Shown here: positions 6,178-19,409 of the stretch, in pieces
Layout of the letters: each line of letters begins with the position of its first letter
How positions within the stretch are numbered: the first letter of the stretch is position 1
Assembly (NCBI RefSeq): GCF_902459465.1
Contig: NC_047063.1
Coordinates: 19,840,001 to 19,904,000, forward strand
Reading direction: 5' to 3'
DNA: 64,000 nt
From: Asterias rubens
Lineage: Eukaryota
Translations under genes and position numbers: made by a program
Notes under the pieces: generated by a model
Databases searched by the model: none
What the model saw: the letters and a program-made list of their open reading frames with translations, nothing else
What the model was told of the DNA's origin: nothing

Positions 6178-9100
6178 ATGATGAGGCAGCTGAAACTAGA
6201 CTACAGGGACCCATGTATGTTTGGGGAGGAGATACAGTCCTTAATGTACGGCTTCTTTGCCAGAAATAGATCTACATTTAGAGATATGATCAAAGATCTG
6301 GTAAGATGAATGACCAAACATCATTGAACTTCAGTTATCCATTACAAAGCTTGATTTACTTTTGTCTAACAAAAAATGCTGAATGCCAGCACGATAATAT
6401 CTTCATGATAGGATATTGAGGAAAATATCGTCAATGTCAAGGATGGTTTTGAAAATATTTGACAAAGATCATGATGATACTTTTAAAAGATAGAGGATAT
6501 CATCTGTTAAGAAGTAACTATAAATTCTAAATAGTAAACTTGCAGGTTCAATCATGTATATTATCTCTATTGAGGGAGTGTTGGCTCTAAAAAGAGCCGG
6601 TGTGATTTTAAAACATTGGCTCTTTTCAGAGTCAACATTCCCTTAAAAGAGATATTATTCATGGCTGTACCCGCAAGTTTACTATTTAGTATCCATAGTT
6701 ACTTCCTTCCTATTCTTGACACCATACAAAGCTTCAAACATTATTTATATCATGTGATGTTTGCTTAAAAATTATCATATAAAATCTAAAGACCTGACTG
6801 CCTTTGTAGGCTGTATACACTTTTTGAAATCTTCCGCAATATTTCTGTACAGCATTATTATAGCAATTGAATACATATGAGTGTAACTGCAACATGAGAG
6901 AGAGTTGCAGAACTAAACCAGCGGTAACTTGTGGTTACTAGAGATTGAACCTTGGACAACCCTGGTAAACCTCATAAAACCTTGAGGCTAACCTCAAGTT
7001 ACCGCATGTTTAATTTTGCTTTTATCAATGACGAATCTAAATCAACAGATCAGATAATCAGTAGGCGAGATAAAACCCTCAAGAGCTATAACTAAAGCAT
7101 GTTTTTTTTGTTTAGTTTTTTTTTTGTATTTTTAAGCAGTTTGTATCAAATAAGTAAAAAGTGCTATTTAAATAAGGTTATTATTGTTATTATCATTGAG
7201 AAAACAGATTTAGCTGTTGCAAACAACTTACCAACCAAAAGGATTGATGGTATAAATGCAAAATATAGTTTCGACCCTAGCAGAGTCTTTCTCGAAGGCT
7301 AATTATTATTATTCATACGTGTTCTGTTCTGTTAAATTCTTAAAATCTTGTTAAGACAATGACACAATTTTTAACCTGATATATATATTCTTATTTCTTT
7401 TCAGGGCCATTTATACTGGAGGAGATTCTTGGTGACTTTCAAAGCGCATTGTATGAACATTCAACTGATTGCAAACCCTTACGACCTGGTTAGTTCCCGC
7501 AATAATAATAATAATAATATCAAAGTCTTATACAGCGCACGAATCTACCAAACAAGGTACTTAAGGCGCTGAGTATAAACAAACTTTCAGAAAGATAGGT
7601 TATAGCACTTATAAGGGTTTACACGGTGCTACGGAGGATTTAGCAGCCACAGCCAGGAACACCGAGGCAAACCCCTTCTCTTTTTGATAAGTGCACTGGG
7701 TTTTACATGCATTACACAGCACATAAGACCATTGGTTTTATTTCCCATCCGAAGGACGAAGCAATGGTTAAGTGTCTTGCTTAAGGACACAAGTGTCACG
7801 GCTGGGGATTCGAACCCCCCACTCTGCTGATCAGAAACACCACAATTCGGTGCTCTTAACTGCTCGGCCACATCACTTCCACTATGCAAAGTTTCATATC
7901 TTATGTGGAAGAGCACTCAATATGGATATAGATAAAATCATTGGACATTTGTGTGAGTGCTGCGTTCCTGTCAATATGCAGACTGAAAATTAACCACCTT
8001 GCGCAGTTCATTAAGAGCCAGGGTGTCATGGCCGAGTGATTAAGAGTATCGAATTCAAGTTCTGGTGGCTAAGTCATCGGAGTGTGGGTTCGAATCCCGG
8101 TCATGTCAAGTGTGTCCTCGAGCAAAATGCTTCACTAGAATTGCTTCTCTCCACCCAGGGGTATAAATGGGTACCTGTAAGGGAAGAGGTTGATATTGTG
8201 TTAGAAAAAGCCTTTTGAGCGCACAGCAGCGCTCCGGGCTGTAAAGAGCTGAGAAAGATTAAAGGAATGTTATTGGTCCAATGACCAGGGCACTAATGTA
8301 AAGCGCATTGATACGGTTATTGTAAAATGCACTATATAAGAACTAGCTATCATGGTTATTATTAAAGACTCTGGACGCTGGACACTATTGGCAATTGTCA
8401 AAGACCAGTCTTTCCACTTGGTGTATCTCAACATATGCATAAAATAACAAACCTGTGAAAATTTTAGCTCAATTGGTCGTCGAAGTTGCGAGATATGAAT
8501 GAAATAAAAAACACCCTAGTCGCACGAAGTTGTGTGCTTTCAGATGCTTGATTTCGAGACCTCAAAATCTAATTCTGAGGTCTCAAAATCAAATTAGTGG
8601 AAAATTACTTCTTTCTCGATACCTAGTTACTTCAGAGGGAGCCATTTCTCACAATGTTTATACTACTAACAGCTCTCCATTACTCATTACCAAGTATGTT
8701 TTTATGCTAAAATTTATTTTGAGTAAATTACCAATAGTGTCCACTGCCTTTAAACACTGCTCCTTCAGTGTTAGGTGTAAGCAACTTGTTCCAAATCCAT
8801 TCTCTGTCGTGAATCTTTTTTTAATTTGATTTTGAACTGAACACAGGGTTCATCCTACAGAAATGTGATCATCGAAGGGTTCAACTACTTGGACATGCAG
8901 ATTTTGATTGGTAAGTACAGGATTTATAGATTTATCAACATAAAAAAAAATTGTGTATCATGTTGAATTAGCAGCTTTTCACCTTTGCAATTTCCATACC
9001 TACCTAACTACTCACCAAAAGTATTGCTAGGTTTTGATTTGGCTTTCATTTATTTTCTTCAGCCAAGCAGTGTTGCTCCTCAATATTCCCTGTTCCCGAC

Positions 9101-18700: not shown

Positions 18701-19409
18701 TGTTGTTGGTTTCATTTTCAGCTGTTATGATAGAATGCAGGTTCGCTTCAGGTCCTACTGCAGCAGAGATTGCCAAGGTTTGTAGCATTTTTAATGGTTT
18801 CATTTAGGTAACAGCTGGTCTGCCCTCATTTTATAATTATTTATTTGCGGGCTTTTATTGGAGGAATATATAAGTTATTGTTTTCCTGTAATGCTTTTCA
18901 TTTTGCTGTTATGCGCTTTGAGGAATGCTAGTTCATATTGCGCTATATAAATACTGTTTTATTATTATTATTATTATTTAGGTAAGGCAGCGTCCAAATA
19001 AGTGACTATTTTTATATATTTTTACTTGACTACTTCTTGGCAATTTGAGTTTTAGCAGCGGGTACTGTAACGATTTAATAGATGTTAAATTTGCATCAGG
19101 GATAAAATATATTCATTTTGGTTTTACCCATATACCTCGATGTGTGTAAGCACTGTATATCACATTCCATGAAATTGCATTTCCCTGTTTACAGTGTCTG
19201 ATTGGCCAAGACATCGTCGAGAACACAAGGAGTTGGAGCGAGTGCGGTGTCTACTCGAGGAGGAGGACTCTAAAGAGGCCTGGGAGAACGAACTGGTCCA
19301 ATACATCAATGGCTACTACAAGACTGAGGATACCGTTAGGGCACCGGTCAGACGAGCAAAGTCTGTCACATCAAGCCAAAAGAGTCAGGAATGTTCGGAT
19401 AGTTCATGA
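6178..19409 (+). CDS. 503-aa protein: cGAS/Mab-21-like NTase-fold region (degenerate active site) plus C-terminal MYND-type zinc finger
   Basis: Exons 6178-6300, 7405-7488, 8847-8910, 9472-9570, 9719-9807, 11930-12215, 13710-13747, 14561-14734, 17135-17300, 18075-18192, 18722-18777, 19195-19409. All introns are GT-AG, phases are consistent, total 1512 nt, Kozak GCCACCATG. Contains CSKC..CKIC..YCSRDCQVSDWPRH. Gene structure is strong; the NTase assignment is motif-based. Confidence 0.85.
7500..7870 (-). mobile_element. DeuSINE-like element with (AAT)n tail
   Basis: Reverse homolog of 45923-46290. Confidence 0.75.
8020..8345 (+). mobile_element. tRNA-derived SINE with CORE/Meta-type central domain
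   Basis: TGGCCGAGTGA A box, GGTTCGAATCC B box, TGTCCTCGAGCAA..CTCTCCACCCAGGGGTATAAATGGGTACC. Confidence 0.75.
8366..8749. mobile_element. Kolobok-like MITE family A (reverse orientation)
   Basis: TTAA on both flanks, AG..CT termini. Confidence 0.85.
10034..10412. mobile_element. Kolobok-like MITE family A
   Basis: TTAA|AGGCAGTGGACACTATTGG..CCAATAGTGTCCACTGTCT|TTAA. Confidence 0.9.
10417..10784. mobile_element. Kolobok-like MITE family B
   Basis: TTAA|AGCCATTGGACACTTTCGG..CCGAAAGTGTCTAATGGCT|TTAA (18/19 TIR). Confidence 0.85.
10790..10985 (-). mobile_element. tRNA-derived SINE (Meta/CORE-type), partial
   Basis: Reverse homolog of 8020-8200. Confidence 0.7.
11442..11824. mobile_element. Unclassified TIR element carrying CCAAT boxes
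   Basis: 14-bp TIR CATTCATAAATACC. Confidence 0.55.
12697..12960 (-). mobile_element. SINE 3' part with (AAT)n tail
   Basis: CCCTGGGTGGAGAGAAGCAATT central domain and tail. Confidence 0.7.
14908..15279. repeat. Inverted pair of a second tRNA-derived SINE family forming a 139-bp stem
   Basis: 14941-15080 is the reverse complement of 15141-15279 with two differences. Diverged family members occur at about 19078, 28225, 32915, 36660 and 59190. Confidence 0.92.
15280..15735 (-). mobile_element. L2 LINE 3' fragment
   Basis: HISPIVHNLHWLPIHLRIQYKIILLTFKALHGLAP..YGDRAFS followed by a GCGCT-type tail. Confidence 0.85.
15735..15910 (-). mobile_element. DeuSINE-like 5' part
   Basis: GGGACCTACGGCTTTACGTCCCATC and B box (reverse). 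Confidence 0.65.
15970..17064. mobile_element. CACTA/CMC-like non-autonomous element
   Basis: TA|CACTCTAA..TTAGAGTG|TA with subterminal TGAGTAAAT repeats. Confidence 0.5.
17580..17815. repeat. Diverged about 120-bp tandem duplication
   Basis: TGTAGATGCATTTACCACATGATATCATATTGCAGGCT and ATATTGAATGGTCAGACAGT each occur twice. Confidence 0.8.

What the first reader, a model, noticed from the sequence alone, without database searches (positions are those of the whole stretch)
6178..19409. Candidate cGAS-like (Mab-21 fold) pseudo-nucleotidyltransferase fused to a MYND zinc finger
Seen: a clean 12-exon, 503-aa ORF that the ORF track only fragments. Exon 8847-8910 encodes G70-SSYRNVIIEGFNYLDM, which aligns without gaps to the human cGAS activation/catalytic segment GSYYEHVKISAPNEFDVM (G, S, Y, V, I, N and D identical). 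The first metal-binding acidic residue (cGAS E225) is Tyr83, while D227 is kept as D85. Downstream, in the right order, come a strand MILELTTVP (cf. cGAS SVDITLA, possible third acidic residue E275) and FKLVRH..WRPFY (cf. cGAS FYLVPK..WRLSF). A predicted long N-terminal helix precedes the GS motif. The Mab-21 C-terminal helical lobe is not recognisable; a MYND finger follows instead. Known: cGLRs are animal innate-immune NTases with varied domain fusions, and MYND fingers are protein-interaction modules that often bind proline-rich motifs. Inference: a catalytically dead or rewired cGLR acting as an adaptor or decoy. I do not know of a described cGLR-MYND fusion.
Basis: partly seen in the sequence, partly recalled or inferred. 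Interest (0 to 1): 0.85.

Follow-up and report, generated by a model that had tools for sequence, protein, structure and literature searches.

The report
Starfish DUF8117 protein with MYND finger
The 12-exon gene is real, transcribed and already annotated in the starfish Asterias rubens; it ends in a true but unusual MYND zinc finger, and nothing I could test shows that its front part is a cGAS-like enzyme fold.

Summary
The 12 exons, all with AG/GT borders, splice to 1512 nt and 503 aa. The product is letter for letter RefSeq XP_033641893.1, "uncharacterized protein LOC117302182" of Asterias rubens. RNA contigs join exon 9 to exon 10 exactly and link exon 8 to the MYND exons.

The MYND finger passes Pfam's threshold (aa 396-442, 25.5 bits against a cut-off of 22.7). 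Its last zinc ligand is His, giving a C6H2 pattern.

The cGAS/Mab-21 reading is not supported.
- Pfam gives no Mab-21 or other NTase hit at E<=10, and a family profile finds no cGAS, OAS or MAB21 chain in the PDB at E<=10.
- The published cGLR motif fails. No [DE]h[DE]h occurs anywhere in the three orthologues.
- In the syntenic Patiria miniata orthologue (42% identity), "GS" reads GTS and "WRPFY" loses FY. The supposed third-acid strand lies in the least conserved stretch (13-25% identity).
- Public tables already place the N-terminal part in Pfam PF26431 (DUF8117).
- The 7/18 match to the cGAS segment is reached by 1.1% of shuffles.

AlphaFold2 and ESMFold give unusable models (pLDDT about 31-34), so the fold remains open.

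Best reading: a single-copy DUF8117-MYND protein found so far only in starfish, probably a protein-interaction adaptor. Interest is low.

The parts
6178..6300 (+). Exon 1 (aa 1-41), start codon at 6178
   Evidence: Colinear tblastx hit to exon 1 of the Patiria gene. An AG acceptor at 6161-6162 suggests a further 5'-UTR exon upstream; this was not checked.
7405..7488 (+). Exon 2 (aa 42-69)
   Evidence: Conserved exon in Patiria.
8847..8910 (+). Exon 3 (aa 70-91). It holds the segment at 8847-8900 that matches the quoted cGAS 18-mer at 7 of 18 positions, and it is the best-conserved N-terminal block (68% identity to Patiria).
9472..9570 (+). Exon 4 (aa 91-124)
   Evidence: the Patiria gene has an exon covering the matching residues (its aa 91-124), so the exon is conserved.
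9719..9807 (+). Exon 5 (aa 124-153)
11930..12215 (+). Exon 6 (aa 154-249). It begins with a conserved hydrophobic helix at aa 154-172 (11930-11986) and includes the invariant PPCD motif (D196).
   Evidence: Kyte-Doolittle peak of 1.92, and 1.72 in Patiria.
13710..13747 (+). Exon 7 (aa 249-261), a Lys-rich and poorly conserved linker
14561..14734 (+). Exon 8 (aa 262-319). It contains MILELTTVP (14591-14617) and FKLVRH..WRPFY (14657-14713), and is weakly conserved.
   Evidence: X1 contig 1 ends on 14558-14736. No tblastx hit to Patiria at 1e-8.
17135..17300 (+). Exon 9 (aa 320-375), a predicted helical, charged segment followed by a linker
   Evidence: X1 contig 7 covers 17133-17300 and continues at 18075.
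18075..18192 (+). Exon 10 (aa 375-414). The MYND finger starts at 18137 (C396).
18722..18777 (+). Exon 11 (aa 414-433), the middle of the MYND finger
   Evidence: The 56 nt left over in X1 contig 7 equal this exon's length.
19195..19409 (+). Exon 12 (aa 433-503 plus stop). The MYND finger ends at 19226 (H443), followed by an acidic helical tail.
   Evidence: RNA reads of X17 cover 19116-19500.

Best explanation
This is the single-copy Asterias rubens gene LOC117302182. Its product has four parts. First comes a conserved N-terminal region (about aa 40-215, roughly 55% identical to Patiria) that public Pfam tables call DUF8117 (PF26431). Next is a variable Lys-rich linker and a weakly conserved beta-like segment (aa 216-315). 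A charged helical segment follows. The last part is a divergent MYND zinc finger (aa 396-443) with long spacers and a C6H2 ligand set. Shown here: the gene model, its transcription, its positional orthologue in Patiria miniata, and the MYND finger. Inferred: the protein works as a zinc-finger adaptor. On this reading the MYND finger docks on a proline-rich motif of a partner, as MYND fingers of ETO, BS69 and DEAF1 do (established knowledge), and the DUF8117 part supplies a second, unknown activity or binding surface. It is not demonstrably a cGLR and cannot be an active nucleotidyltransferase of that type.
For: Identity with XP_033641893.1 and its Pfam labels PF26431 plus PF01753. The Patiria orthologue P0002 is 42% identical over its full length, is named a DUF8117 protein, has matching exon borders, and has the same MyTH4-FERM neighbour on the minus strand. 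The MYND hit is above Pfam's threshold, and the ligand pattern C-x2-C-x12-C-x2-C-x11-C-x3-C-x7-H-x3-H is conserved in all three orthologues. RNA contigs splice exon 9 to exon 10 and tie exon 8 to the MYND exons. A phmmer search with exon 6 against 1.84 billion representative proteins found only the Asterias and Patiria clusters.
Against: No function of DUF8117 is known, and no structure could be modelled (ESM Atlas pLDDT 0.34). The adaptor mechanism therefore rests only on what MYND fingers do elsewhere. The Patiria MYND scores below Pfam's threshold (14.7 bits). The terminal His in place of Cys and the long spacers might change or abolish peptide binding. The taxonomic range was probed with only one exon (aa 154-248). 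The three word-index searches with the whole protein, the two-sequence alignment and aa 40-215 returned only P0001 and missed even P0002, so they say nothing about wider relatives.
Confidence: 0.6

Rival explanations
1. One reading: DUF8117 is an extremely diverged, catalytically dead Mab-21/cGAS-type NTase core that has lost its C-terminal helical lobe and gained a MYND finger, and it acts as a decoy or adaptor in nucleic-acid sensing.
For: There is a 7/18 ungapped match to the cGAS GS-loop and beta-2 segment, with p of about 0.011 by shuffling. That segment is the best-conserved N-terminal block: G70, S72, Y73, V76 and G80-Q87 are invariant. The stretch Y-L-D-M-Q-I-L-I alternates like a beta strand (read from the sequence). 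An invariant acidic residue in a hydrophobic stretch exists at D196, in PPCDIF. A long helix is predicted before the motif (low confidence).
Against: Pfam gives no Mab-21, OAS or NTP_transf hit at E<=10, and no PDB cGAS, OAS or MAB21 chain is hit at E<=10. PADLOC gives no CD-NTase hit. The cGLR motif is absent: there is no [DE]h[DE]h, and GS reads GTS in Patiria. The spacing from D85 is 111 residues to D196 or 190 to E275, against the published 50-90. WRPFY and MILELTTVP are not conserved. A very hydrophobic helix and a variable Lys-rich linker would sit inside the core. The motif was picked after the fact from many possible catalytic motifs.
Confidence: 0.08
2. The conserved hydrophobic helix at aa 154-172 is a membrane anchor. 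The protein would then be membrane-bound, presenting its MYND finger to the cytosol.
For: Kyte-Doolittle 19-residue means are 1.92 (Asterias) and 1.72 (Patiria), both above the classical 1.6 cut-off. The helix is conserved and flanked by Lys and Arg on both sides.
Against: There is an invariant Arg (R163) in the middle of the helix. There is no signal peptide, and 153 conserved residues would have to cross the membrane. Buried helices of soluble domains reach similar scores. No dedicated topology predictor was available.
Confidence: 0.1

Closest known systems
Pfam PF26431 (DUF8117) plus PF01753 (zf-MYND) proteins: Patiria miniata XP_038067905 / A0A914AVX2 and Asterias amurensis XP_071807137
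   Same: Same architecture and length (503-512 aa). Identity is 98% to Asterias amurensis and 42% to Patiria. Exon borders match, and the MyTH4-FERM neighbour is the same.
   Different: Nothing essential differs: these are its orthologues. None has a known function.
MYND-finger adaptors (ETO/CBFA2T NHR4, BS69/ZMYND11, DEAF1, ZMYND10)
   Same: A C-terminal MYND finger with the core Y-C-S-x2-C-Q-x2-D-W-x2-H. The nearest PDB MYND by sequence is ZMYND10, but only at E of about 1.6-2.
   Different: The last ligand is His, not Cys, which gives a C6H2 pattern like Pfam zf-C6H2. The spacers of 12 and 11 residues are longer than usual. The N-terminal domain is unrelated to any of these proteins.
cGAS-like receptors / Mab-21 family (Pfam PF03281, PF20266)
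   Same: One 18-residue segment resembles the cGAS GS-loop and beta-2 at 7/18 positions.
   Different: There is no profile match, no catalytic-triad motif and no recognisable C-terminal lobe. The other claimed motifs are not conserved in the orthologue.

Membership tests
cGLR / Mab-21 (cGAS-like receptors) | Match to the Pfam Mab-21 profiles (PF03281 or PF20266) or to solved cGAS, MAB21L1 or OAS sequences | tested here: not met
   hmmscan of P0001 and P0002 against Pfam at E<=10 lists no NTase family. A profile of the three orthologues against all PDB chain sequences at E<=10 gives only zinc-ribbon and MYND hits.
cGLR / Mab-21 (cGAS-like receptors) | Motif h[QT]GS-x8-20-[DE]h[DE]h-x50-90-h[DE]h (Li et al. 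2023, PMC9980059) | tested here: not met
   A regex run on the three orthologues found no match, even for G[SG]-x8-20-[DE]h[DE]h alone. No [DE]h[DE]h occurs anywhere. Patiria has G-T-S.
cGLR / Mab-21 (cGAS-like receptors) | Predicted or solved structural homology to cGAS (bilobed NTase core plus helical lobe) | tested here: inconclusive
   AlphaFold2 with the 3-sequence alignment gave mean pLDDT 30.9 for both the full length and aa 1-330. The ESM Atlas model has pLDDT 0.34. Foldseek on such a model gave only noise, with TM below 0.15.
cGLR / Mab-21 (cGAS-like receptors) | Conservation of the core strands (third-acid strand, W-R-x-S-F strand) among orthologues | tested here: not met
   aa 216-290 are 13-25% identical to Patiria. 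WRPFY aligns to WKP with FY deleted.
MYND zinc finger (PF01753) | Profile score above Pfam's gathering threshold | tested here: met
   25.5 bits against 22.7 at aa 396-442 in Asterias. The Patiria orthologue scores only 14.7 bits.
MYND zinc finger (PF01753) | Eight zinc ligands in the order C-C-C-C-C-C-H-C | tested here: inconclusive
   Seven ligands fit. The eighth is His (H443) in all three orthologues, giving a C6H2 pattern. Zinc binding was not tested.
Pfam PF26431 (DUF8117) | Match to the family profile | not testable with these tools
   The local Pfam copy returned no PF26431 row, so it appears to lack the model. Membership rests on precomputed hits listed for P0001 and for the Patiria gene, and on UniRef's name for the latter.

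The most novel reading that the evidence does not exclude
DUF8117 is a cryptic Mab-21/NTase-fold pseudoenzyme that sequence profiles cannot see. On this reading it is a starfish-specific dead cGLR that lost its helical lobe, kept one metal-binding Asp, and was wired to a MYND finger as an immune adaptor or decoy.
Probability: 0.07. Interest if true: 0.6.

Novelty: already known. Interest (0 to 1): 0.15.

Why it matters
As it stands this is an annotated, uncharacterised gene found only in starfish, and its two domains are already catalogued as DUF8117 and zf-MYND. The value of this check is negative: the proposed cGLR-MYND fusion should not enter any list of cGAS-like receptors on present evidence. 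If a structure later showed an NTase fold, it would be an unusual truncated pseudo-cGLR. Patiria miniata is an experimentally tractable starfish in which that could be tested.

Tried and rejected
- **Pfam on single exons:** nothing found.
- **Word-index homologue searches:** runs with the whole protein, the two-sequence alignment and aa 40-215 returned only the query cluster. They missed even the Patiria orthologue, so they say nothing about family range.
- **Metagenome contig scan:** 189 pattern matches, none confirmed.
- **ESM Atlas look-alikes:** three searches all scored 0.71 or less. That is below the tool's own noise level, and no Mab-21 cluster appeared.
- **PADLOC and NCBIfam on the N-terminal part:** no hits.
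- **Structure prediction:** two AlphaFold2 jobs were unusable. A Foldseek run on one of the models gave noise and is not used as evidence.
- **Literature:** no paper holds both cGLR and MYND, and none holds Mab-21, MYND and nucleotidyltransferase together. DUF8117 and the four accession numbers are also absent from the searched library. The cGLR survey's held supplements contain neither accession nor species name, which proves little.
- **Paralogues:** none in the window.
- **Not done:** I did not paste cGAS sequences from memory for a direct profile comparison.

Full report
**Observation**

All internal borders are AG/GT. The coding sequence is 1512 nt and gives 503 aa plus a stop. Every quoted string is at the stated residue: G70 at the start of exon 3 (8847), Tyr83, Asp85, MILELTTVP at 272-280, FKLVRH at 294-299 and WRPFY at 308-312. 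The window contains no N and no paralogue of this gene.

**Identity**

A phmmer search with exon 6 (95 aa) against 1.84 billion representative proteins found two real clusters. P0001 is 503 aa and identical to the model. P0002 is 512 aa. The other three hits were repeat proteins.

- P0001 is XP_033641893.1, "uncharacterized protein LOC117302182 [Asterias rubens]".
- An Asterias amurensis protein (P0006) is 98% identical.
- P0002 is Patiria miniata XP_038067905, which UniRef names "DUF8117 domain-containing protein".
- The precomputed Pfam labels are PF26431 plus PF01753 for P0001 and PF26431:DUF8117 for the Patiria gene.

The Patiria locus is syntenic. It has a MyTH4-FERM gene downstream on the minus strand, as at 26.1-29.4 kb of this window, and the exons are colinear with matching borders. 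The gene is therefore a single-copy positional orthologue shared by two starfish orders. The exon 6 search saw nothing outside starfish.

**Transcription**

In one search, RNA contig 7 of run X1 (368 nt) covers 17133-17300 and then 18075-18192, which is exactly the exon 9/10 junction. It has 56 nt left over, the length of exon 11, and 26 nt on the exon 8 side. Contig 1 of X1 (976 nt) ends on 14558-14736 (exon 8) at its positions 798-976. That leaves about 797-800 nt upstream, against 783 nt for exons 1-7 plus a short leader. Junctions 1-7 were not seen directly. The same runs hold about a fifth of the sampled words of 6100-12300.

**MYND finger**

Pfam zf-MYND matches aa 396-442 at 25.5 bits, against a threshold of 22.7. 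The ligand pattern is C-x2-C-x12-C-x2-C-x11-C-x3-C-x7-H-x3-H in all three orthologues. It is a MYND variant with long spacers and a terminal His instead of Cys. This is the best-conserved part of the protein, at 69% identity to Patiria. The Patiria copy alone falls below Pfam's threshold (14.7 bits).

**The cGAS/Mab-21 claim: evidence for**

The ungapped 7/18 match at aa 70-87 is real, and only 1.1% of shuffles of this protein reach it. The segment is the most conserved N-terminal block (68% identity).

**The cGAS/Mab-21 claim: evidence against**

- **Pfam.** No Mab-21, OAS or other NTase family appears at E<=10 for either orthologue.
- **PDB sequences.** A profile of the three orthologues hits no cGAS, MAB21L1, OAS or cGLR chain at E<=10.
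- **Published cGLR definition.** Li et al. (PMC9980059) define the family by h[QT]GS-x8-20-[DE]h[DE]h-x50-90-h[DE]h plus structural homology. The motif is not met in any form that keeps two acids. No [DE]h[DE]h exists anywhere in the proteins, and the Patiria orthologue reads G-T-S.
- **Downstream motifs.** MILELTTVP sits in a stretch that is 13-25% identical to Patiria, and WRPFY aligns to WKP with FY deleted. Exon 8 gave no tblastx hit between the two species at 1e-8.
- **What would sit inside the core.** The would-be core would enclose a strongly hydrophobic conserved helix (aa 154-172, Kyte-Doolittle 1.92) and a variable Lys-rich linker. The acid-to-acid spacing would be 190 residues. It would be 111 if the invariant D196 is taken instead.

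The 1.1% figure applies to one pre-chosen motif. A reader who is free to recall any catalytic motif will reach such matches often.

**Structure**

The decisive test failed for lack of homologues. AlphaFold2 with the three-sequence alignment gave mean pLDDT 30.9, both for the full length and for aa 1-330. The ESM Atlas models have pLDDT 0.34 and 0.33. A Foldseek run on such a model returned only noise, with TM below 0.15, and I give it no weight either way. The three word-index homologue searches returned only the query's own cluster, and a metagenome scan confirmed nothing. The fold of DUF8117 remains unknown. I put the NTase-fold reading at about 7-8%.

**Most likely function**

*Shown:* the protein has a conserved N-terminal DUF8117 region (about aa 40-215), a variable linker, a weakly conserved beta-like segment (aa 263-315), a charged helical stretch, a MYND variant finger and an acidic tail.

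*Inferred:* by analogy with other MYND proteins (established knowledge of ETO, BS69 and DEAF1), it is an adaptor whose finger binds a proline-rich motif of a partner. DUF8117, with invariant Cys and His at H56, C57, C129, C133, C195, H299 and H301, supplies a second and unknown function.

A rival is that the helix at aa 154-172 anchors the protein in a membrane (about 10%).

**Novelty and score**

The gene and both domain families are already in public databases, though nobody has studied them. No paper in the searched library mentions them, and none pairs cGLR with MYND. The proposed cGLR-MYND fusion is not established. Interest is low (0.15).

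Noticed in passing
window 14946-15275 (intron 8): A near-perfect foldback: 136-nt arms, 98% complementary, with a 58-nt spacer. 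It overlaps a tRNA-Ser(AGA)-like unit at 15115-15187. RNA contig word depth here is 40,000-60,000, against 10-30 on the exons. This looks like an abundant tRNA-derived SINE family rather than part of the gene.
   Followed up: partly
window 8374-8572 and 10213-10411; 6511-6705: More inverted repeat pairs (88% and 83% complementary) sit in introns 1, 2 and 5 and flank exons 3-5. They look like SINE or MITE copies in opposite orientation.
   Followed up: no
window 6161-6177: An AG acceptor lies 15 nt before the start codon, so a 5'-UTR exon probably lies further upstream. The RNA contig carries only about 14-17 nt before the ATG.
   Followed up: no
window 11930-11986 (aa 154-172): A conserved, very hydrophobic helix with an invariant central Arg. 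The Kyte-Doolittle mean is 1.92, and 1.72 in Patiria. It could be a membrane anchor or a buried core helix.
   Followed up: partly
window 26161-29404, minus strand; L001 24075-28959: The MyTH4-FERM gene downstream is conserved in position and orientation next to the Patiria orthologue.
   Followed up: partly
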